This document shows, piece by piece, positions 21,851 through 37,134 of a stretch of 37,134 nucleotides of DNA. A program made the translations under genes and the position numbers. The notes under the pieces were generated by a model. That model worked only from the letters and a program-made list of their open reading frames with translations, did not search any database and was not told the DNA's origin. This DNA is from Guillardia theta CCMP2712. Lineage: Eukaryota > Protista > Cryptophyta. Location of the stretch: positions 48,310 through 85,443 of the forward strand of contig NW_005434652.1 in NCBI RefSeq assembly GCF_000315625.1, written 5' to 3'. How positions within the stretch are numbered: the first letter of the stretch is position 1; the number at the start of each line of letters is the position of its first letter.

Positions 21851-21922
21851 GGGGATTTGGTCTAGCGGTATGATTCTCGCTTTGGGTGCGAGAGGTCCCG
21901 GGTTCGATCCCCGGAATCCCCC
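21851..21922 (+). tRNA. tRNA-Pro(TGG)
   Basis: 72-nt cloverleaf: acceptor GGGGATT/AATCCCC, anticodon stem CTCGC/GCGAG with loop TTTGGGT (TGG at 21883-21885), T arm CCGGG-TTCGATC-CCCGG, T5 run about 20 nt downstream. Confidence 0.97.
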
Positions 21923-22312
21923 TGAGAAGCGATCCGCCTTGCTTTTTGCTTCTGGGCAGATGCTGGAATATGATGCGTTCAGCTGTCATGATCACTCGAA
22001 ACTTGCCGTTCAGATGCTTTTTGTACTATTGGACATCTTGTCTTTACTTGTGGATGCTCATGGTTACATGCAAACTCAACAGATCCGTCGCCTTGGAGAG
22101 TTTTACCTGGTTGCAATACTGTAGGCCATCAAGTTTAAACTTTCAGCATGTCAAAAACATGGCAGTCCTCTCACTCTTATTTCCGCCATTTTACTATGCT
22201 CAGTGTCAATTCCATCGAGCATGACATTCCCACTCACGACACACCGTCGTCGTCGCCATCATCATCATCACAGCACAGCAGCATGTCGTCAGTCAACAAG
22301 GAACAAACAAGC

Positions 22313-22903
22313 TCATAACGGATGCATACACATATCTTCCTCCTTCACACCAACACAACAGGTGAGATCCACTATATGGCCAAATACATGCGGCTCGTTT
22401 GCGAGTCTTTGACTCTCCTCTGCCGTGAAAGCGATGGCGATCCAGTGATCTATCTCGCGGTTAGAGCGCTCTCCAGACCCGACCTGGCGAGCACAGGACT
22501 GGGTCTTCACGTAGCAGCCGATGGATCTCAGGTACCTTGCGTTCATCTGCTCTTGCCACTCGCGGAGATCCCGATCATACTTGAGCACACGATTCTTGCT
22601 GCGCATCCTTTGAATGCAGCACACGCCAGGAATGATGACGCAGGGAAATATGAGCATGGAAGTAGTGAACTGATAGCAGGACGTCGGCTGCTTCTTCCGT
22701 ACCTCCTCCAGCTCTTTGAGTACAGTATCCAAGTCGTTTCGCTTCATTGCGGTCTGAAAGATCTCTTCGGGTATGGGTACGACAATGCCGCTGCCTTCCT
22801 TGGAAAACCAGCTACTAGGTTCCCAGAGGAGGTTTGCTCGGACGAGCTTGCCGTCCTTGTAGATGAGCTTGGGAGGAGGCTGCTTGACTTGACTGGGATC
22901 CAT
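22313..22903 (-). CDS. 196-aa Cys-containing protein, copy 1; possibly Erf4/Golgin-A7/CHIC-like
   Basis: Intronless ORF from the first ATG (MDPSQVK) with an AT-rich TATA-like tract about 100 bp upstream. Layout PEE..helix..Cys-rich hydrophobic segment..LREWQEQMNARYLRSIG..WIAI recalls Erf4/CHIC; the family call is tentative, the gene itself is well supported. Confidence 0.7.
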   Translation of the reverse strand: MDPSQVKQPPPKLIYKDGKLVRANLLWEPSSWFSKEGSGIVVPIPEEIFQTAMKRNDLDTVLKELEEVRKKQPTSCYQFTTSMLIFPCVIIPGVCCIQRMRSKNRVLKYDRDLREWQEQMNARYLRSIGCYVKTQSCARQVGSGERSNREIDHWIAIAFTAEESQRLANEPHVFGHIVDLTCCVGVKEEDMCMHPL

Positions 22904-23164
22904 CTCGACAGGTAGAAGGAGGGACAAGGGAACAGTCTCTCCTCCTCTTCCCGCTCCTCCCTCACCTCTTCCCGCTCCTCCTCTCCTCCGATTATATAAA
23001 GATTATAAAACTCCCGGTACCAACTTATCATTTTTTTTCCCAAGTGGTGGTCAAATTCGAACTCGCTGGTCAAAAAACAACTGTTGTTCTCCTGGTGACG
23101 ATGTTTCGATCCTGCGTTGATCGAAACTTCACAAAGATGATCATCTACATGTTACCTGCTCGAG

Positions 23165-25873
23165 AACTTGTCTGAAACACCTTACAGTCCTGTCAGTCTT
23201 TACGGCTGCTCTAGGACATAATCGTCAGTCCTGTCAGTCCTTACGGCTGCTCTAGGCCCGGATATAATCGTCGTCGTCTCAGAAAGTTCCATTCTTCCAC
23301 ATTCAGAGTGACGGCTCGACGAGTGCTGGAGAGACAGAGAGAGAGAGCACCAAGCCTTCTTCTACAGGCTGCCAGTGCAGGAGTGAAAGTTGCATGATCC
23401 GTGCTTCGAAGCAGATTTATTGAGAAACTAGTTATGCAAGATTTGATGATGTGTGATGGCAACAAACTTGCACAGTGACAAACCTAGCTTGCCACATAAT
23501 CCAATGTACCTGACACACACATGCTTTTTGCACTATTGGACATGTTGTCTTTACTTGTGGATGCTCATGGTTACATGCAAACTCAACAGATCCGTCGCCT
23601 TGGAGAGTTTTACCTGAATGCAATACTGTAGGCCATCAAGTTTAAACTTTCAGCATGTCGAAAACATGGCAGTCCTCTCACTCTTATTTCCGCCATTTTA
23701 CTATGCTCAGTGTCAAATCCATCGAGCATGACATCCCCACTCACGACACACCGTCGTCGTCGTCATCATCATCATCACAGCACAGCAGCATGTCGTCAGT
23801 CAACAAAGAACAAACAAGCTCATAACGGATGCATACACATATCTTCCTCCTTCACACCAACACAACAGGTGAGATCCACTATATGGCCAAATACATGCGG
23901 CTCGTTTGCGAGTCTTTGACTCTCCTCTGCCGTGAAAGCGATGGCGATCCAGTGTTCTTTCTTGCGGTAAGAGTGCTCTCCAGACCCGACCTGGCGAGCA
24001 CAGGACTGGGTCTTCACGTAGCAGCCGATGGATCTCAGGTACCTTGCGTTCATCTGCTCTTGCCACTCGCGGAGATCCCGATCATACTTGAGCACACGAT
24101 TCTTGACGCGCATCCTTTGAATGCAGCACACGCCAGGAATGATGATGCAAGGAAAGATGAGCATGGAAGTAGTGAACTGATAGCAGGACGTCGGCTGCTT
24201 CTTCCGTACCTCCTCCAGCTCTTTGAGTACAGTATCCAAGTCGTTTCGATTCATTGCGGTCTGAAAGATCTCTTCGGGTATGGGTACGACAATGCCGCTG
24301 CCTTCCTTGGAAAACCAGCTACTAGGTTCCCAGAGGAGGTTTGCTCGGACGAGCTTGCCGTCCTTGTAGATGAGCTTGGGAGGAGGCTGCTTGACTTGAC
24401 TGGGATCCATCTCGACAGGTAGAAGGAGGGACAAGGGAACAGTCTCTCCTCCTCTTCCCGCTCCTCCCTCACCTCTTCCCGCTCCTCCTCTCCTCCGATT
24501 ATATAAAGATTATAAAACTCCCGGTACCAACTTATCATTTTTTTTCCCAAGTGGTGGTCAAATTCGAACTCGCTGGTCAAAAAACAACTGTTGTTCTCCT
24601 GGTGACGATGTTTCGATCCTGCGTTGATCGAAACTTCACAAAGATGATCATCTACATGTTACCTGCTCGAGAACTTGTCTGAAACACCTTACAGTCCTGT
24701 CAGTCTTTACGGCTGCTCTAGGACATAATCGTCAGTCCTGTCAGTCTTTACGGCTGCTCTAGGATATAATCGTCGTCGTCTCAGAAAGTTCCATTCTTCC
24801 ACATTCAGAGTGACGGCTCGACGAGTGCTAGAGAGACAGAGAGAGAGCACCAAGCCTTCTTCTACAGGCTGCCAGTGCAGGAGCGAAAGTTGCATGATCC
24901 GTGCTTCGAAGCAGATTTATCCAGAAACTAGTTATGCAAGATTTGATGAAGTGTGATGGCAACAAACTGGCACAGTGACAAACCTAGCATGCCACATAAT
25001 CGAATGTGCCGAAGTAGTCACCGTGAAACTTTAGTAAAAAGTGAGGCAAGATGAGTAAAGGAGAGAGTCAGTGTGACAAGTTCTAAGTATGAAGCATGTA
25101 ATAGTGACACAACGACAGAGAGGTTTCTGTTTCACAGAGCATCATAAATGAAGCAACCAGTCAATCAGACTTGTACATGTATGAAGATTTAGAGATTCAT
25201 CCTGGGACACGCATACAATAATGGCTATCCCGTCCCACGTGTTTGCTGTTTGGTTATCTTTAAGCAAATAAAAAATACTCGGTTTCTCTCCACCCTCCTC
25301 CTACTTCTCTCTCGCTCTTGCTCTTGCTCTTGCTCTCCCCACTCCCTCTCTCCTCTCCCTCTCCCTCATCTCTCGCTCTCGCTCTCTCCCTCGTCCCTCT
25401 CTCTCCTCTGTCTCCCTCTTAGCATTCTTCTCACTCAAGTTCCATCCACTCCCTCCTCTCCCTCATCTCCCTCCCTCCTCTCCCTCCCTCCTTCCCCTCC
25501 ACCCCTCCACCCATCCTTTTCCTCCCTCCCTCCTCTCGCTCCCTCCCTCCCTAATCTCCCTCCCTTCCCTCCCTCCATCCTTCTTCTCCATCCGTCCCTC
25601 CCTCCCTCGCTCCCCTCCCCCCTCCTTTCTCCCCTCTTCTCCCTCCCTCCATTCTCACTCTCCATGCATCGATCCCTCCTCTCGCTCCATCCATCCTTCT
25701 TCTCCCTTCTTTCTCTTCTCCCTCCATCCTCTCCTCTCCCTCCATCTCTCCATCCTCTCCCTCCCTCCCTGGCTCATCTCCATCCCCTCCTCTCCCTCCC
25801 TTTACTTTTCTGCCTTCTAATCATTTCTATTCATTTCATTGAGGCGAGCTGCTTTGCACCACTGCGCAAACTT
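23165..25873. repeat. Left copy of the ~2.6-2.7 kb direct repeat flanking the Crypton-like element
   Basis: Colinear with 29290-31854, from AACTTGTCTGAAACACC to CCACTGCGCAAACTT. Confidence 0.9.
23820..24410 (-). CDS. 196-aa protein, copy 2
   Basis: Paralogue of copy 1 with 8 amino-acid differences. Confidence 0.7.
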   Translation of the reverse strand: MDPSQVKQPPPKLIYKDGKLVRANLLWEPSSWFSKEGSGIVVPIPEEIFQTAMNRNDLDTVLKELEEVRKKQPTSCYQFTTSMLIFPCIIIPGVCCIQRMRVKNRVLKYDRDLREWQEQMNARYLRSIGCYVKTQSCARQVGSGEHSYRKKEHWIAIAFTAEESQRLANEPHVFGHIVDLTCCVGVKEEDMCMHPL

Positions 25874-26166
25874 ATTTGTATTTTAGACGGGAGGGCGCAA
25901 AAAAAAAGGGCGCGACACAAGGGTAGGGTTAATTTGTGACCAATGACCCGGTCCTTCTATACGAGTTCATGCCATGGGGTCGCACTCTACCGGGTCTGGA
26001 TGGCCATTGTAGAAGCAGAAGCGATCAGACAAGGGGAAAACTGAGCATCTTTCCTCGTCGCCATGATAATCATCAGAGTGAACAGTGCCAAGGACACAGA
26101 ATTTCACAGATTCCACCACAATCGTAAGTACCCATATCAGGGAGAACATTTGCATCCTGGCAAACA

Positions 26167-27807
26167 ATGTCGGCACCAGCTGGGCAGACATGCTGGTATG
26201 AATCCTCATGTGTTATGCGAGATCAACCTGAGGCTCAGTTGAAAGTTTGCCAGTATTGCAACAAACCCTTCCATCATCTTTGTGCTAGTACTCTGAAAGG
26301 CACAGATGATATGAACTATTGTGGGCAATGCAACCGAGGAGCCCATAACAATACCGTGACTCAAAGTAGACCTTCGAATAAACGGCGGGTCAGTGCTCGC
26401 ACTGACGAAGAATTGTTGCATGTCTTCCAGGATCGCAGGGTCATTGGTACAGGGGGACTTGATATGAACATCCAGGCATTTCGAGAATTGCAGTCAAAAG
26501 TGGTCAGTCCCAGTACGCAGAGGAACTACGCATACCGCATTCATGCTATCATAGCTTTCTTCAGGTCTCACCCACGATATCATGCAGCTCTGAATGAAAC
26601 CTTGGACGACCTCGTTTTGCCATTGCCATACGATGCATTAGTAGCATTCTTCGGTTGTTTGTCGCAAAAGGAGCGGGTCAGGGATAAGATCAAGCAATCA
26701 AAAGCGAAACGTATGAAGAAGGGCACTCACCCAAACATGCAGATCAATGGCGATCACGTGGAAGTCGATGATGAAGCCGAAGATGAAGCAGGCCCATCAC
26801 AGTCGCATGCTTCATATGAAGATGAAGATGATGATGTTGAGATGGATGATGACGTTGAAGAACAAGCAGGCACCACCAGCAATGATGTTGAATTGGTAGT
26901 GGGACCCACTGGCATTCAAGACGTGAATTTTGTAACCAGTGCAGCGGACAAACCGACAGTAGCAGTGTCTACGATACGAGGGTACAAAGGTGCGTTGAAG
27001 TACCTGTACCAATGTAGACACATGGAATTTGTAGCTAGGGACATGCCAGAAGGAGAAGCAGCAGTGTGTATAGACGAGGTGTTGGAACGTTGCATGGAGT
27101 CTTACACGAAAGTAGTTACAGAGAAGAAATCTCGAGGAGTGATGCGCATTCATGAAGGCAGAACGGGGATAAGCATGAAGGCAGAACGGAACAGCAGACT
27201 TTGCTGTACTTCCCCCCCACTTCACAACGGAAGGATTGAAGCAAATAGAAGAGATCGGCTGGGAGAGGTTCATATCAGGTTACAGCAGTTTCCCGGCAGG
27301 ATTTCAAAAGTGTATCCGCTTCTTCCTTGCAAGTATCTTACTCCAACCAATACAGAAATATTGAAAGGCGTGAAAGAGATGAGGGTTGAAGTGCGGGATG
27401 CCATCAAGGAGGAGATGAAGGTAATCGAGGAGACGATGGATGAGAAGATGAATGGAATGAAGGAAATACTGGACCAGAAGTTTGACGATCTCAAAACTGT
27501 AATGAGGGACGAACTGCGAACGAATTTAGGTTTTGTTGCTGGACGGAGGAGGGATGTACCAGGTCCCAGTGGGGGGCAAGTTGCATCTGGAAGCATGGAC
27601 TTCACAGATGCTTTCCGCATCGTCATGCAACAGATGGGTGGTCATATACGGGAGCAGGTGCAGGCCGCCGTGGGGGAAGCTATGCGACAGATGGTACTGG
27701 ATGGAGCAGGCCATGGTATGATGGCACATGGGGTGAGCAACGTGATGTCACATGCTGGCTCGAATGGAAGATTGAATGAGAGTGAATCGGAGGGGGTGCA
27801 GAAGTGA
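26167..27807 (+). CDS. Crypton-derived ORF, 546 aa: PHD-like Zn finger, integrase N-terminal (SAM-like) region, coiled coil; recombinase catalytic domain absent
   Basis: C-x5-C...CQYCNKPFHHLC...YCGQC (C4HC3); helical motifs as above; no R..HxxR..Y catalytic set visible. Confidence 0.7.
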   Translation: MSAPAGQTCWYESSCVMRDQPEAQLKVCQYCNKPFHHLCASTLKGTDDMNYCGQCNRGAHNNTVTQSRPSNKRRVSARTDEELLHVFQDRRVIGTGGLDMNIQAFRELQSKVVSPSTQRNYAYRIHAIIAFFRSHPRYHAALNETLDDLVLPLPYDALVAFFGCLSQKERVRDKIKQSKAKRMKKGTHPNMQINGDHVEVDDEAEDEAGPSQSHASYEDEDDDVEMDDDVEEQAGTTSNDVELVVGPTGIQDVNFVTSAADKPTVAVSTIRGYKGALKYLYQCRHMEFVARDMPEGEAAVCIDEVLERCMESYTKVVTEKKSRGVMRIHEGRTGISMKAERNSRLCCTSPPLHNGRIEANRRDRLGEVHIRLQQFPGRISKVYPLLPCKYLTPTNTEILKGVKEMRVEVRDAIKEEMKVIEETMDEKMNGMKEILDQKFDDLKTVMRDELRTNLGFVAGRRRDVPGPSGGQVASGSMDFTDAFRIVMQQMGGHIREQVQAAVGEAMRQMVLDGAGHGMMAHGVSNVMSHAGSNGRLNESESEGVQK

Positions 27808-28373
27808 GCAGGGAGGCGACACCGGAGAGGAACGCGGTGCTGGTTTCATCACTAGGACAGGGGGATGATGGCAACGGTGAGGTACAAGTTGGAGGGGATG
27901 ACTTCGAATGGGAAGGATGGGGGCCTGGCAGACATATGGTCCCGTTGGGTTGGCCATTTCCTTTGCGTTGCAGAGTTCGAAATATGTTCATGTGGTGGAA
28001 TTTGGGGCAAGATGTCATCGTGCAAGGACAAGTGAGGAGGATTCGGCCCTTAAAGCACCTAAGTAAGTTTCCTTTCTCCGCAGACGTGTCGAATGATGAG
28101 AACACGAGGAAGAATGTGTACAAAGCATATTATGTGATGACCATGGTGGAAGATATATGCCGAGAGCAAGGAGTACTGCAAGGAAGCGAGGTAATTATGC
28201 CTCACAACTTCTGTCAATGTTACAGAACTGGTTTCCGTACACTGGTGGAAAGGGCGTACGGAGAAGATGCATGGACGGCGATGGCACAGAGAAAGAGGTA
28301 CTCGCAATACTCATACATCACATACTACAAGCACTTGGTGGAATATCGTGCAGACATTTTCCAAAGCACGTAG
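27804..28373 (+). CDS. C-terminal Crypton domain (GCR1_C-like DNA-binding region) in a different frame; frameshift or short intron
   Basis: W-G-x-x-x-H-x-V-P-x-x-W-x-F-P ... W-W-x-x-G ... I-R-P-L-K-x-L; a 65-nt GT-AG intron at 27796-27860 would join it in frame to the upstream ORF. Confidence 0.55.
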   Translation: MSREATPERNAVLVSSLGQGDDGNGEVQVGGDDFEWEGWGPGRHMVPLGWPFPLRCRVRNMFMWWNLGQDVIVQGQVRRIRPLKHLSKFPFSADVSNDENTRKNVYKAYYVMTMVEDICREQGVLQGSEVIMPHNFCQCYRTGFRTLVERAYGEDAWTAMAQRKRYSQYSYITYYKHLVEYRADIFQST

Positions 28374-29309
28374 TGTAGAGCATGTACAGTTCGTTCCTGA
28401 ATGAAATCATTGTTGAGTTGATACATGCGTGTTAAGCCCTAATGTGGAAATGGAATGTTGGAAATGATGAGTCTCGCTACGAGGAAATAAGCGATGGCAG
28501 GTTGTGATGGTACACTCACTCAAGTTCTATGTGAGAGGATGATGAGAATGAAAGCAACAGATAATGCAGTTGATCAGGTATCATACTGCACTGCAAATCA
28601 AGGGTGTTGTGGGAATTATGACAGTAAAGGGATGCCGGATTATGCTTTGTTGGAGTTGAGGTTGTGAGATGCCGTGGTGAGTATGAGCTGCCATCTGCCA
28701 TGATGGTGATGGAGGAGATATTCGCATCAATCACTGTCTTGATGACATGCTAAACATGATCGGTGGTGTGCATATTGTCATGTACGGCATTATGGATTTT
28801 CATGCACTGGATTCATGTTATGTTCCAACAGAAACGTTGCGTGTCAACCATATTGCAAAGTATTGCATATCGTCAGGTTTGAGCAATTCTTGAAAGAGCC
28901 TTCAAGGGGTGTTACCGATTCATGATCATCAAGGCGAATGAGGTGGCTGACATGGAGGTTGAAGCTCAGGGGTTATCATGATTGGAGATATGTTACTTCT
29001 TTGGCATTGGCCACATCGTGATGCTGCATATTGATCACTGATGATAACGTTCCCACCACCATCAGTGAATTGGCTGCAAGCTGGAGTGCAAGGCTGTGAC
29101 GGATCAGTGCAAGTCCGAGACGGGATAGTCAACCCATGAGCAAAGCATGTGCGACTTGAGCACATTCGGACTTCAAAGGCAAGTCAACCTTGGATTTGAG
29201 CTGTCGTCTTGATACTTGGAGGGAAGATGGGGGAGCCTGGATTCAGAGGTCATGTGATGGGTGAGGAGGTGTTCCGACGCCCTGTCGAAAACTTGTCTGA
29301 AACACCTTA

Positions 29310-29514
29310 CAGTCCTGTCAGTCTTTACGGCTGCTCTAAGACATAATCGTCAGTCCTGTCAGTCTTTACGGCTGCTCTAGGACATAATCGTCAGTCCTGT
29401 CAGTCTTTACGGCTGCTCTAGGACATAATCGTCAGTCCTGTCAGTCATTACGGCTGCTCTAGGACATAATCGTCAGTCCTGTCAGTCATTACGGCTGCTC
29501 TAGGACATAATAGT
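29310..29514 (+). repeat. 41-bp minisatellite x5 (CAGTCCTGTCAGTCTTTACGGCTGCTCTAGGACATAATCGT)
   Basis: Units start at 29310, 29351, 29392, 29433 and 29474; about 2 units near 23185 and near 24692, 1 unit near 30904. Confidence 0.95.
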
Positions 29515-30025
29515 GGTCGTCTCAGAAAGTTCCATTCTTCCACAGAGAGAGAGCACCAAGCCTTCTTCTACAGGCTGCCAGTGCAGGAGTGAAAGTTGCA
29601 TGATCCGTGCTTCGAAGCAGATTTATTGAGAAACTAGTTATGCAAGATTTGATGATGTGTGATGGCAAAAAACTGGCACAGTGACAAACCTAGCTTGCCA
29701 CATAATCCAATGTACCTGACACACACATGCTTTTTGTACTATTGGACATGTTGTCTTTACTTGTGGATGCTCATGGTTGCATGCAAACTCAACAGATCCG
29801 TCGCCTTGGAGAGTTTTACCTGAATGCAATACTGTAGGCCATCAAGTTTAAACTTTCAGCATGTCAAAAACATGGCAGTCCTCTCACTCTTATTTCCGCC
29901 ATTTTACTATGCTCAGTGTCAAATCCATCGAGCATGACATCCCCACTCACGACACACCGTCGTCGTCGTCATCATCATCATCACAGCACAGCAGCATGTC
30001 GTCAGTCAACAAAGAACAAACAAGC

Positions 30026-30616
30026 TCATAACGGATGCATACACATATCTTCCTCCTTCACACCAACACAACAGGTGAGATCCACTATATGGCCAAATAC
30101 ATGCGGCTCGTTTGCGAGCCTTTGACTCTCCTCTGCCGTGAAAGCGATGGCGATCCAGTGTTCTTTCTTGCGGTAAGAGTGCTCTCCAGACCCGACCTGG
30201 CGAGCACAGGACTGGGTCTTCACGTAGCAGCCGATGGATCTCAGGTACCTTGCGTTCATCTGCTCTTGCCACTCGCGGAGATCCCGATCATACTTGAGCA
30301 CACGATTCTTGACGCGCATCCTTTGAATGCAGCACACGCCAGGAATGATGATGCAAGGAAAGATGAGCATGGAAGTAGTGAACTGATAGCAGGACGTCGG
30401 CTGCTTCTTCCGTACCTCCTCCAGCTCTTTGAGTACAGTATCCAAGTCGTTTCGATTCATTGCGGTCTGAAAGATCTCTTCGGGTATGGGTACGACAATG
30501 CCGCTGCCTTCCTTGGAAAACCAGCTACTAGGTTCCCAGAGGAGGTTTGCTCGGACGAGCTTGCCGTCCTTGTAGATGAGCTTGGGAGGAGGCTGCTTGA
30601 CTTGACTGGGATCCAT
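30026..30616 (-). CDS. 196-aa protein, copy 3
   Basis: Protein identical to copy 2; one synonymous change seen (AGA/AGG near 30119). Confidence 0.7.
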   Translation of the reverse strand: MDPSQVKQPPPKLIYKDGKLVRANLLWEPSSWFSKEGSGIVVPIPEEIFQTAMNRNDLDTVLKELEEVRKKQPTSCYQFTTSMLIFPCIIIPGVCCIQRMRVKNRVLKYDRDLREWQEQMNARYLRSIGCYVKTQSCARQVGSGEHSYRKKEHWIAIAFTAEESQRLANEPHVFGHIVDLTCCVGVKEEDMCMHPL

Positions 30617-31887
30617 CTCGACAGGTAGAAGGAGGGACAAGGGAACAGTCTCTCCTCCTCTTCTCTCTCCTCCCTCACCTCTTCCCGCTCCTCCCCCTCC
30701 TCTCCTCCGATTATATAAAGATTATAAAACTCCCGGTACCAACTTATCATTTTTTTTCCCAAGTGGTGGTCAAATTCGAACTCGCTGGTCAAAAAACACC
30801 TGTTGTTCTCCTGGTGACGATGTTTCGATCCTGCGTTGATCGAAACTTCACAAAGATGATCATCTACATGTTACCTGCTCGAGAACTTGTCTGAAACCCC
30901 TCACAGTCCTGTCAGTCCTTACGGCTGCTCTAGGCCCGGATATAATCGTCGTCGTCTCAGAAAGTTCCATTCTTCCACATTCAGAGTGACGGCTCGACGA
31001 GTGCTGGAGAGACAGAGAGAGAGAGCACCAAGCCTTCTTCTACAGGCTGCCAGTGCAGGAGTGAAAGTTGCATGATCCGTGCTTCGAAGCAGATTTATTG
31101 AGAAACTAGTTATGCAAGATTTGATGATGTGTGATGGCAACAAACTTGCACAGTGACAAACCTAGCTTGCCACATAATCCAATGTACCGAAGTAGTCGCC
31201 GTGAAACTTTAGTATAAAGTGAGGCAAGAGGAGTAAAGGAGAGAGTCAATGTGACAAGTTGTAAGTATGAAGCATGTAATAGTGACACAACGACAGAGAG
31301 GTTTCTGTTTCACAGAGCATCATAAATGAAGCAACCAGTCAATCAGACTTGTACATGTATGAAGATTTAGAGATCCATCCTGGAACATGCATACAACAAT
31401 GGCTATCCCGTCCCACGTGTTTGCTGTTTGGTTATCTTTAAGCAAATAAAAAATACTCGGTTTCTCTCCACCCTCCTCCTACTTCTCTCTCGCTCTTGCT
31501 CTTGCTCTCCCCACTCCCTCTCTCCTCTCCCTCTCCCTCATCTCTCGCTCTCGCTCTCTCTCCCTCTTAGCATTCTTCTCACTCAAGTTCCATCCACTCC
31601 CTCCTCTCCCTGCCTCCCTGCCTCATCTCCCTCCCTCCTCCTCTCCCTCCATCCTCTCCCTCCCTCCTCTCCCTTCCTCCTCCTCTCCCTCCTTTCTCCC
31701 CTCCCTCCCTCTCTTTGCTGAGCGTACAGCCCCCGGCGGCCCCGTTTCTTCTATCCTAAGTTTACAGATTGAATTACTATGATTACTTTTCTGCCTTCTA
31801 ATCATTTCTATTCATTTCAGTGAGGCGAGCTGCTTTGCACCACTGCGCAAACTTTTATAATCAGCAGTAATGCAGGAGTGATCGACG

Positions 31888-34800: not shown

Positions 34801-37134
34801 AAGAAGAATCCCAACATTCTCACAACCATCGTAACTCAACTTGTTTCGAGAGTTGCAACAAGTTTGACATGTTCTCTAGAATCTCTCCGACAATGTTGTG
34901 GAGATTGACAAGCTCCTGTCGTGCTACGGTCATCAACAAAGAAAGACTGTTTGCAGAGTTAACATGTTTCATTGCAGGATTTCAAGACCAAGAAATCGTC
35001 AGAGTATTCGAAAGAGCACCTCAGGTTTCCATTTACCAGTTCTCTTCGAAGCTTCTCTTTCCAACAAGCTCTTATTCGCTTTCCTCCGTCCTGCCTGCCT
35101 CTGTATTGAAACTTTGTTTCCTCACTTGCTCTCTCAGATCATGGGCTCCAACATTACAAGAAGTATAAAGCCTTCCCTCCTCTTCCTGCGCGATGAATTG
35201 AACCTCTCAGACTCACAGGTCCTTGAAGCTTTTCACTCCCCTACCTCCTCCTCCTTGCTTCTCCCCTCCCTGCTCCTTCTCCTTCCCCTCCTCTTCCTCC
35301 CTCTGCCTCCTCCTCCTTATCTGATGCGTCGTCTAGATTCACAGACTCGTCAAGCGAGCTCCTCAGATTCTTTCGCTCTCACCCGATCGCGTCCTGCGGC
35401 CTCATACTCACTGTCTCCTTTACTCCATCGGTGATCGTCCTTCCCCCTCCTCCTCCTCCTCTTGCGTGTCCTTCGTCTTGCCCATCTTCTCCTCCTCCTC
35501 ACCTTCGACATCTTTCTCTGCCATCCTCCTTGGTCTCATTCTTGCTCCTCCTCTTGCTCCTTGCTCGCTCCCTCTCAACTTCTTCAGGCATCTCTCCTCC
35601 GCGGCTCGCAAACGTTCTCTGTCGCGCTCCCTCCCTCCTCTACCTCAGGTAAGGACATCTCAATCTTCTTGGTTTCCCCCTCCTACTCCCTCTCCCTCCT
35701 CCCTCTTCCTCCTTCCTTTCGTTTGACAGGAGCTGCAGTATCGAAGAGACTATCATCCCCAACTTTAACTTCTTCGTGCGAGAAGGCTTCTTGACAAGAC
35801 AAGAGTGAGTAGAGGAGCTGTATCAGCATCGTTTGACGTCTTGCTCAGATTCTGCGAGGTCATGCAGAAGAATCCTTCCATCCTGTGCGCTAGGTGAAGA
35901 TAATGGAGAAGCAGGAGGAGGAGGAGGAGGCGACAGGAGCAGCAGGAGGAAGAGCGAGCAATAGTTTAGAATGATGATGCAGTGTAGAAAAGGAGCTGAC
36001 GACAAGGAGCTCAGGGTAAGGGAGGTACAAGCAGAAATGAGGCGTCAGAGAAGGAGGGGCAGGGGCAGGGGCAGGAGGAGCAACGGAGGAGGTGGAGATT
36101 TTGATATGAAATGGCGTTCAGCATCATCAAGAACATCGATCGAAAGATTGAGTGGTTGAGATCTCAATTCGGCTTCTCTGAACGGAGCATCAGAAATCTT
36201 GTCGTCAAACAGCCTCAGGTGCTGCTGATCCTGATTCTTGATGATTGCTCTTGCTTTGCGTGTCATGTTCGTTACATCTCATCATAACAAACTCTTTGGG
36301 ATATGGACACTTTCATCATCGTGTTTCGCTTCCTTGAAAGTCTTTTGTCTTCCTAAATGCTTTCTGATTACTTTGAAATTCTGTTTTGATCTTGTTTCAC
36401 CACCATCTTTCTAGGTTCTCATGTCAAGTCTGGAGGAAAAGTTGATCCCGATGCTTTATTTCCTGATGGATGAACTTTTCTTGAGTCAAGACGAAGTAAT
36501 CTTGTTGAAATCCTCATTTCATCTCCTGTTTCTGCACTTCCTTCTCATCCTCCGTCTCGTCCTTCCTTCTCTCTCCTCCTCCCTCCTCCTCCCTCCTCTC
36601 CTCCTCCTCCCTCCCTCCCCTCCTCCCTCCTCCCTCCTCCCTCCTCCCTCCTCCCTCCTCCCTCCTTCCTCCCATTTTCTCCTCCCTTCTCTTTTTCCTC
36701 CTCCTCTTCTCTCGTAACATTCAACCAGGCTGTCGCAATTCTTTCGAGCAACCCCTCTCTCTTCGGCTTCAACATCTCCATCAACCTTCGTCCGAAAGTT
36801 GACTTCTACACACAGAGGGTAAAAACATTCAAAAATTGTGATGAGATGAACGGTTCTGAGATCATTCTAGCTGAATGCTTCATACGGAGATGTCGGAAGG
36901 ATGTTGTTGAGATATCCACAGTTGCTTGGCCTGTCTATCAAGGTTTTCTCCCGCTTCACTCCTCTCCTCTCCTCTCCTCTCCTCTCCTCTCCTCTCCTCT
37001 CCTCTCCTCTCCTCTCCTCTCCTCTCCTCTCCTCTCCTCTCCTCTCCTCTCCTCTCCTCTCCTCTCCTCTCCTCTCCTCTCCTCTCCTCTCCTCTCCTCT
37101 ACTCGCATCTCCACAGCTAGCACACACATTCCTG
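31888..37134 (+). CDS. mTERF-repeat protein, many exons, probably plastid-targeted; continues past the window end
   Basis: Repeated mTERF units: FPQILGL|SLNQNLRPKIMFF, FPQLLSYSLENNIKPK, YPSIFANSIDNHLMPLMDFL, RAPQ|IMGSNITRSIKPSLLFL, NPSLFGFNISINLRPKVDFY, RYPQLLGLSIK. N-terminus VAILLVLIESCGS-F followed by an S/R-rich stretch resembles a bipartite presequence. Confidence 0.9.
36961..37100 (+). repeat. (CCTCT)n microsatellite, about 28 units, intronic
   Basis: Read directly. Confidence 0.95.

What the first reader, a model, noticed from the sequence alone, without database searches (positions are those of the whole stretch)
23165..31854. Crypton-like element nested exactly between two copies of a ~2.6-2.7 kb host segment (gene-sized 'target-site duplication')
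Seen: 23165-25873 recurs at 29290-31854, and the only thing between them is the transposon-like insert, so both duplication breakpoints coincide with the element ends. The duplicated segment carries a whole gene. Known: Cryptons use a tyrosine recombinase, are thought to move via circles and do not normally make long TSDs. Inference: one event joined the element ends to two similar sites 2.7 kb apart (CGCAAACTT and CGAGAACTT), for example on sister chromatids, duplicating the host gene. That would be recombinase-driven gene amplification.
Basis: partly seen in the sequence, partly recalled or inferred. Interest (0 to 1): 0.8.

Follow-up and report, generated by a model that had tools for sequence, protein, structure and literature searches.

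The report
Dead Crypton between duplicated algal genes
In the alga Guillardia theta, a broken Crypton jumping gene sits exactly at the seam between two copies of a 2.6-2.7 kb host segment carrying a small gene, and both seams lie at look-alikes of the element's own end, which suggests but does not prove that a Crypton recombinase made the duplication.

Summary
The window is Guillardia theta CCMP2712 scaffold JH992986.1. A 3,421-bp insert (25874-29294) is the only sequence between two direct copies of a host segment (23170-25873 and 29295-31854; 97.2% identical at substitutions). Each copy carries an intact 196-aa gene. It comes from an older 1,507-bp tandem duplication that shows no sign of the element.

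The insert is a recombinase-dead deletion derivative of a Crypton family. Full-length relatives keep the R-K-HxxR-W-Y set, and this copy lacks that core.

Both junctions have paralogous empty sites in the window. The host 9-mers at the two breakpoints (CGAGAACTT, CGCAAACTT) each match the element's terminal CGAAAACTT at 8 of 9. The only other genomic copies (scaffold JH993132.1) stop resembling this one within 6-26 nt of its left end. They also carry the same terminal motif, so the ends are real to that resolution.

My best reading (0.45) is integration at one site followed by recombinase-mediated exchange of the element's right end with the look-alike site on a sister chromatid. One event cannot be shown, and rivals remain.

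The scan noted a similar Crypton-spaced tandem array elsewhere in this genome.

The parts
21851..21922 (+). tRNA-Pro(TGG) gene, 89 nt upstream of the gene array (context only)
   Evidence: ARAGORN
22011..23517 (.). Oldest 1,507-bp unit (A1+E1) of the host array. It is the first copy of an older tandem duplication.
   Evidence: 97.5-98.2% identical to the next unit
22313..22903 (-). 196-aa gene, copy 1 (protein P0004)
23161..23169 (+). Host site c1 (CGAGAACTT) at the start of the duplicated segment. It is an uninterrupted paralogous 'empty site' for the element's right junction, and it is also present at 24668 and 30880.
23170..25873 (.). Left copy of the duplicated host segment (E1-A2-E2-tail)
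23511..23517 (+). 7-nt filler (TGACACA) at the junction of the older 1.5-kb tandem duplication. It was copied to 29717-29723, so the older duplication came first.
23820..24410 (-). 196-aa gene, copy 2
25865..25873 (+). Host site c2 (CGCAAACTT) abutting the element's left end
25874..29294 (+). Non-autonomous, recombinase-dead Crypton-family element (3,421 bp). AAACTT is repeated at 25868-25873 and 29289-29294.
26167..27807 (+). 546-aa open frame: zinc-finger-like N-terminus, integrase SAM-like segment, then coiled-coil. The catalytic core is missing.
27804..28373 (+). 189-aa frame holding the conserved C-terminal domain of the family. It is cut off from the first frame by a 1-nt loss after 27794, and it lacks 87 nt at 28348 relative to the other copies.
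29283..29294 (+). Right-terminal 12-mer TGTCGAAAACTT, probably the element's own arm. It is 13/15 like host site c1.
29295..31854 (.). Right copy of the duplicated host segment (E3-A3-E4-tail)
29310..29511 (+). 41-bp minisatellite with 4.9 copies here against 2.0 in the left copy
30026..30616 (-). 196-aa gene, copy 3. The protein is identical to copy 2, with one synonymous difference.
31846..31854 (+). Second copy of c2, followed directly by unique host DNA. It is the paralogous 'empty site' for the element's left junction.

Best explanation
A Crypton-family element integrated, as a circle and by tyrosine-recombinase site-specific recombination, at host site c2 (...CGCAAACTT|), just beyond a small host gene. 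Its right end (...CGAAAACTT|) then recombined with the look-alike host site c1 (...CGAGAACTT|), 2.7 kb upstream on the sister chromatid. This happened either in the same cell cycle, before the sister carried the element, or later with loss of a second copy. That unequal exchange yields segment-element-segment, as observed, plus a reciprocal deletion that was lost. The recombinase came from an intact family member or from this copy before it decayed. The copy has since lost its catalytic core and gained a frameshift. The duplicated genes have since been partly homogenised by gene conversion.

Shown: the structure, the exact breakpoints, the similarity of the three sites, and the Crypton nature and dead state of the element.

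Inferred: the recombinase's role, the order of events and the sister-chromatid partner.
For: - Breakpoints coincide with the element's ends, and both have paralogous empty sites in the window.
- c1 and c2 each match the element's terminal 9-mer at 8/9. CGNNAACTT occurs 9 times in the window against 3.2 expected, and 6 of the 9 are in this locus.
- AAACTT flanks the element as a 6-bp direct repeat. Cryptons have 4-6-bp terminal direct repeats that are thought to be recombination substrates (PMC3212892).
- The terminal motif is probably the element's own. Among 6 fetched loci, TGTCG-N(1-4)-AACTT occurs only at this end and, in the other copies, 117 nt after the shared CCGACGCCC. By my estimate the chance of that placement is about 5e-4.
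- Similarity to the only other genomic copies begins at 25880-25900 and runs to 29282.
- Those other copies lie head to tail, separated by 266 bp that recurs after the second copy, on a contig without N. Recombination of an element end with a nearby site, or re-integration of a circle, would give that product.
- Family relatives keep R, K, HxxR, W and Y and resemble Crypton-derived and XerD-type proteins.
- A second agent reported a Crypton-spaced tandem gene array elsewhere in this genome (not tested here).
Against: - The sequence of the final product is the same under several histories, so nothing here shows recombinase action.
- The similarity of c1 to c2 alone is only AACTT plus CG, which ordinary microhomology-mediated duplication could use.
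- The locus has an older tandem duplication with a filler junction and no element, so it duplicates without Cryptons.
- Direct homology to the other copies stops at 29282, so the last 12 nt could instead be host site c1 with one substitution and one deletion.
- The terminal inverted repeat is not significant (p about 0.08).
- The family has only two loci in the assembly, so its ends and target preference rest on very few observations.
- The tails of the two copies differ by about 4% while the genes differ by 0.6%. Conversion therefore blurs the history.
Confidence: 0.45

Rival explanations
1. Duplication first, insertion later. The 2.7-kb segment was tandemly duplicated by microhomology (AACTT shared by c1 and c2) without any element. 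The hybrid junction CGCAAACTT|GTCTG, itself a good target, then received a simple Crypton insertion.
For: The same locus has an element-free tandem duplication. c1 and c2 share a 5-nt microhomology at the breakpoints. A simple insertion at the hybrid site gives exactly the observed junctions.
Against: One of only two loci of this family would have to hit the single junction site among an estimated ten thousand or more 8/9 look-alike sites in an 87-Mb genome (my estimate frequencies). It also leaves unexplained why both breakpoints match the element's terminal 9-mer beyond the microhomology.
Confidence: 0.15
2. Unequal homologous crossover between two independent insertions. One chromosome carried the element at c1 and another at c2, and crossover within the element gave segment-element-segment.
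For: Both c1 and c2 look like targets. This is the classical route for transposon-junction duplications. The product is identical to the observed one.
Against: It needs two independent insertions 2.7 kb apart from a family with only two loci in the assembly. It also needs a diploid or sexual stage to bring them together.
Confidence: 0.15
3. Capture without recombinase. Extrachromosomal Crypton DNA was taken up as filler at the junction of a tandem duplication made by end joining or template switching.
For: The older duplication in this locus has a filler junction. The element is heavily deleted. Direct homology to the other copies stops 6-26 nt and 12 nt short of the junctions.
Against: The insert is collinear with the other copies and ends at or within a few nt of the family's terminal motifs, not at random points of a circle. 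The 6-bp direct repeat AAACTT fits site-specific integration.
Confidence: 0.1
4. Assembly artefact: two alleles or a circular molecule were threaded into one scaffold.
For: The assembly is a 2012 Sanger-era draft. The related locus L003 has N gaps with 100%-identical flanks, which look like assembly doubling. The right junction was not verified in reads.
Against: There are no Ns here. The two copies differ at 68 substitutions plus indels, and each is joined to different unique flanks. Left-junction 31-mers occur in two runs ten years apart. Depth over the tail is about twice that of unique contigs.
Confidence: 0.05

Closest known systems
Crypton DNA transposons (CryptonS/CryptonF; Goodwin 2003; Kojima and Jurka 2011, PMC3212892)
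   Same: The family encodes only a tyrosine recombinase with a conserved C-terminal domain, and no reverse transcriptase. It has no long terminal repeats, has a 6-bp terminal direct repeat, and is presumed to move through a circle.
   Different: This copy lacks the catalytic core. The termini are not the TATGG reported for most CryptonS. No Crypton paper held in the library describes kilobase-long flanking direct repeats or host gene duplication.
Tandem direct duplications made by alternative (reversed-ends or sister-chromatid) transposition of maize Ac/Ds (PMC3744419)
   Same: The element sits at the junction of a tandem direct duplication of host DNA. Both breakpoints are at element ends, a sister chromatid is the partner, and a reciprocal deletion is expected.
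   Different: Ac uses a DDE transposase, two element termini and 8-bp target duplications. Here a tyrosine recombinase would exchange one element end with a look-alike host site.
Engineered recombinase-mediated tandem duplication in Drosophila (PMC10542505)
   Same: Site-specific recombination between sites at different positions on two chromatids or homologues yields a tandem duplication with the site at the seam.
   Different: That system is engineered with placed sites. Here the sites are natural pseudo-sites and a transposon end.
Aberrant excision and pseudo-att recombination of phage lambda and integrative elements (own knowledge)
   Same: A tyrosine recombinase acts on secondary sites that resemble the core, and tandem head-to-tail integrated copies form.
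   Different: That is a bacterial system with a defined att core and accessory factors. None of this is established for Cryptons.

Membership tests
Crypton (tyrosine-recombinase DNA transposon) | Encodes a tyrosine recombinase with the catalytic R-(K)-H-R-(H/W)-Y set | tested here: not met
   This copy: the 546-aa frame aligns to relatives on both sides of the core but lacks it. Reads from the other copies show extra sequence at 27187/27339. Family level: met. Four full-length relatives keep R219, K246, S335-x-R337, W362 and Y371. P0009 reaches the Pfam cut-off for the integrase SAM-like domain and weakly hits PHROG integrase. So this is a dead derivative of a Crypton family, not an autonomous Crypton.
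Crypton (tyrosine-recombinase DNA transposon) | Similarity to known Crypton or Crypton-derived proteins | tested here: met
   The Atlas neighbours of P0007 are NDC10_II/GCR1_C (0.98), DUF3435 and DUF3504/Phage_integrase clusters. Structural TM is 0.71-0.72 to XerD-type integrases. This is an embedding and predicted-structure result, so one line of evidence only.
Crypton (tyrosine-recombinase DNA transposon) | No reverse transcriptase and no long terminal or inverted repeats (separates it from DIRS/Ngaro and DDE elements) | tested here: met
   Pfam finds no RT or DDE domain. No long terminal repeats were found. The short inverted repeat at the ends is not significant.
Crypton (tyrosine-recombinase DNA transposon) | Short (4-6 bp) direct repeats at both termini | tested here: inconclusive
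   AAACTT lies at 25868-25873 and 29289-29294. However, direct homology to the other copies stops at 29282. The motif match favours an element origin for the last 12 nt.
Transposon-junction tandem duplication (alternative-transposition type) | The element lies exactly at the seam of a direct duplication, with both breakpoints at element ends | tested here: met
Transposon-junction tandem duplication (alternative-transposition type) | De novo origin in one generation, with a reciprocal deletion | not testable with these tools
   Needs pedigrees or population samples.
Long target-site duplication (staggered cuts filled in) | Duplication made by repair of staggered breaks at one insertion event | not testable with these tools
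   Tyrosine recombinases make no staggered target cuts that need fill-in (PMC12220804). I do not file it here.

The most novel reading that the evidence does not exclude
Crypton recombinases in cryptophytes recurrently catalyse unequal exchange between an element end and nearby look-alike host sites, or excise and re-insert circles that carry host DNA. Cryptons would then act as natural 'recombinase-mediated tandem duplication' devices that amplify adjacent host genes. Three arrangements would be products of one mechanism: this locus, the head-to-tail pair with a repeated 266-bp spacer on JH993132.1, and the Crypton-spaced Crinkler-type gene array noted elsewhere in the genome.
Probability: 0.3. 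Interest if true: 0.75.

Novelty: new variant of a known kind. Interest (0 to 1): 0.5.

Why it matters
Transposon-driven tandem gene duplication is well documented for DDE transposons and bacterial insertion sequences. I found no description of it for eukaryotic tyrosine-recombinase transposons, whose mechanism is still inferred rather than shown. This locus offers precise junctions, both empty sites and three look-alike 9-mers. Those give concrete substrates for testing whether a Crypton recombinase acts on pseudo-sites and can duplicate host genes. If general, it would add a route of gene-family expansion in algae. If not, it remains a neat but anecdotal coincidence of a decayed element and a duplication-prone locus.

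Tried and rejected
- Pfam on the element frames gave only sub-threshold hits.
- A profile of the family against PDB sequences found nothing relevant.
- An AlphaFold model of the recombinase region from a 4-sequence alignment was poor (pLDDT 47.6). It was not used for fold search.
- A metagenome scan with the element's right-end 20-mer gave one chance hit with no other similarity.
- More distant Crypton loci in the same genome show no DNA similarity to this element and no long flanking direct repeats (L001 and L006). They could not define ends.
- The idea of significant terminal inverted repeats was rejected (p about 0.08).
- A CGAAACTT motif lies 6 nt before the older duplication's left edge. 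It looked suggestive, but such motifs are common in this locus, so I rejected it as evidence.
- The third repeat in L003 (9969-12884, 100% identical, next to an N gap) was set aside as probable assembly doubling.
- Dating the events by divergence was abandoned, because E4 is identical to E1 and the genes are homogenised.
Full report
**Where the window comes from.** The 196-aa protein of the repeat is found letter for letter on scaffold JH992986.1 (826,832 bp) of Guillardia theta CCMP2712, GCA_000315625.1. The fetched locus L002 equals window 12313-32903 in reverse. The window has no N runs.

**The observation.** Self-BLAST and alignments give this map:
- tRNA-Pro, 21851-21922.
- Unit A1+E1, 22011-23517.
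- Unit A2+E2, 23518-25010.
- CT-rich tail, 25011-25873.
- Insert, 25874-29294.
- E3, 29295-29716, with a 41-bp minisatellite grown from 2.0 to 4.9 copies.
- A3, 29724-30878.
- E4, 30889-31188.
- Tail, 31189-31854.
- Unique DNA follows, leading to an mTERF gene.

It has 2361 matches, 68 mismatches and 435 gap columns. The insert is the only thing between the copies.

That older junction carries a 7-nt filler (23511-23517). The same filler is present at 29717-23, so the 1.5-kb duplication came first and the 2.7-kb one copied it. A2 and A3 differ at 7 of 1154 sites, while A1 differs from A2 at 21, which agrees with that order. However, E4 is identical to E1 over 285 bp, E2 is the outlier, and the tails differ by about 4%. 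Gene conversion therefore blurs any dating.

**The host gene.**
- Each copy holds an intact single-exon 196-aa gene on the minus strand (22313-22903, 23820-24410, 30026-30616), annotated in the public record.
- Its only homologue found outside the window is in the cryptophyte Hanusia phi (62% identity).
- Pfam is silent. The ESM Atlas points to Erf4/GOLGA7-like clusters (0.92), which is a lead only.
- Copies 2 and 3 encode the same protein. Copy 1 differs by 9 non-synonymous and 2 synonymous changes, five of them within seven codons.

**The insert.**
- Its 546-aa frame has a zinc-finger-like start and a weak integrase SAM-like match.
- Word search found two near relatives (P0001, P0002) and a 35% G. 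theta relative. A second search found full-length relatives of 698-800 aa.
- In their alignment R, K, S/H-x-x-R, W and the D-R-Y tyrosine are invariant.
- P0009 reaches the Pfam cut-off for the integrase SAM-like domain and weakly hits PHROG integrase.
- P0007's Atlas neighbours are the Crypton-related NDC10_II/GCR1_C, DUF3435 and DUF3504/Phage_integrase clusters. Its Atlas model matches XerD-type integrases at TM 0.71-0.72.
- The family is therefore Crypton-type.
- The window copy lacks the whole catalytic stretch.
- Reads and contigs laid on it show the other copies have extra sequence at 27187/27339, an extra A after 27794 (a frameshift here) and 87 more nt at 28348.
The copy is dead and non-autonomous.

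**Other copies and the element's ends.** Cluster look-up led to GUITHDRAFT_120108 on JH993132.1, fetched as L003.
- Similarity between the window element and L003 runs from 25900 to 29282 by BLAST. A local alignment places the L003 left end at window 25880 (p about 0.011).
- L003 holds two head-to-tail copies. A contig without N (L003 1-4472) runs from one copy's right part, through 266 bp (F1), into the next copy's left end. After the second copy F1 recurs and continues into different DNA.
- A third repeat next to an N gap is probably assembly doubling.
- Direct homology stops 12 nt before the window element's right junction. However, the terminal 12-mer TGTCGAAAACTT has a counterpart, TGTCGTGGAACTT, in L003, 117 nt after the shared CCGACGCCC.
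- The pattern occurs nowhere else in the six fetched loci. I estimate the chance of that placement at about 5e-4.
- The simplest reading is a 116-nt deletion in the window copy, so the 12-mer is the element's own end. Host origin from c1, with one substitution and one deletion, is not excluded.

**The junctions.**
- Left: host ...CGCAAACTT, then the element.
- The second tail ends with the same 9-mer and goes straight into unique DNA, giving an empty site.
- Right: element ...CGAAAACTT, then GTCTGAAAC.
- The uninterrupted units read ...CGAGAACTT then GTCTGAAAC, giving the other empty site.
- AAACTT thus flanks the element as a 6-bp direct repeat, as described for Cryptons (PMC3212892).
- Both host sites match the element's terminal 9-mer at 8/9.
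- CGNNAACTT is enriched in the window (9 against 3.2 expected), and six of the nine are in this locus.
- The terminal inverted repeat noted in s1-439884 is not significant.

**Read support.** Contigs of a 2021 run and a 2011 run both hold the exact 25844-26155 stretch across the left junction. It has 30 host letters, one short of the tool's bridging rule. Window-type contigs have depth about 140-190. The other-copy type has 240-410, which fits two or three other copies. RNA reads show a poly(A) site at 28421, mostly from the other copies.

**Mechanism.** A tyrosine recombinase joins two sites per reaction, so a literal single event joining three partners is unlikely.
- Best reading: integration at c2 on one chromatid after replication, then exchange of the new right end with c1 on the sister. 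This gives exactly the observed product without a second element.
- The same product arises in three other ways: insertion into a pre-existing microhomology duplication (0.15), homologous crossover between two insertions (0.15), or capture of element DNA at an end-joined junction (0.10).
- Artefact is unlikely (0.05).
- Taken together, a causal link between element and duplication has about 0.7.
- The head-to-tail pair in L003 and the unverified Crypton-spaced gene array in note s1-436999 hint at a recurrent process.

**Comparison and novelty.** The nearest precedents are Ac/Ds alternative transposition, which leaves the element at the seam of tandem direct duplications (PMC3744419), and engineered recombinase-mediated tandem duplication (PMC10542505). 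Searches of the paper library found no Crypton case. I class it as a new variant of a known kind, with moderate interest, because the evidence is one locus plus two suggestive ones and no functional test.

Noticed in passing
L003:1-8193 (JH993132.1, scaffold end): The only other copies of this Crypton family lie head to tail, separated by a 266-bp stretch that recurs after the second copy. The start of the DNA beyond it resembles the window element's left end (p about 0.011). It could be a tandem dimer of a longer element or a second case of flanking duplication.
   Followed up: partly
L003:6919-12884: A 2.9-kb block (element 3' part plus a DUF4215 gene) is repeated at 100% identity on either side of a 100-N gap. 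This is probably assembly doubling, but if real it is another gene duplication with element sequence at the seam.
   Followed up: partly
window 22313-22903 vs 23820-24410: Copy 1 and copy 2 of the 196-aa gene differ by 9 non-synonymous and 2 synonymous changes. Five of the amino-acid changes fall within codons 146-152, which suggests a conversion tract or diversifying selection. The protein looks Erf4/GOLGA7-like by embedding only.
   Followed up: partly
window 29310-29511, 24692-24774, 23185-23260: A 41-bp minisatellite starts 15 nt after the c1 site. It has about 2 copies in two units, 4.9 next to the element and about 1 in the fourth.
   Followed up: no
window 21851-22011: A tRNA-Pro(TGG) gene lies 89 nt before the left edge of the older tandem duplication, and a CGAAACTT motif lies 6 nt before that edge. 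Such motifs are frequent in this locus, so this may be chance.
   Followed up: partly
window 30889-31188 vs 23226-23510: The E segment before the right tail is 100% identical over 285 bp to the E segment of the first unit, not to its positional counterpart. This is clear gene conversion within the array.
   Followed up: yes
L001:1-9325 (JH993069.1): A 332-bp satellite array at about 98-100% identity lies next to another, distantly related and interrupted Crypton gene.
   Followed up: no
window 36951-37110 and 25342-25801: There is a long (CCTCT)n microsatellite and CT-rich low-complexity tracts. Depth in reads is very high there, so they are repeated genome-wide.
   Followed up: no
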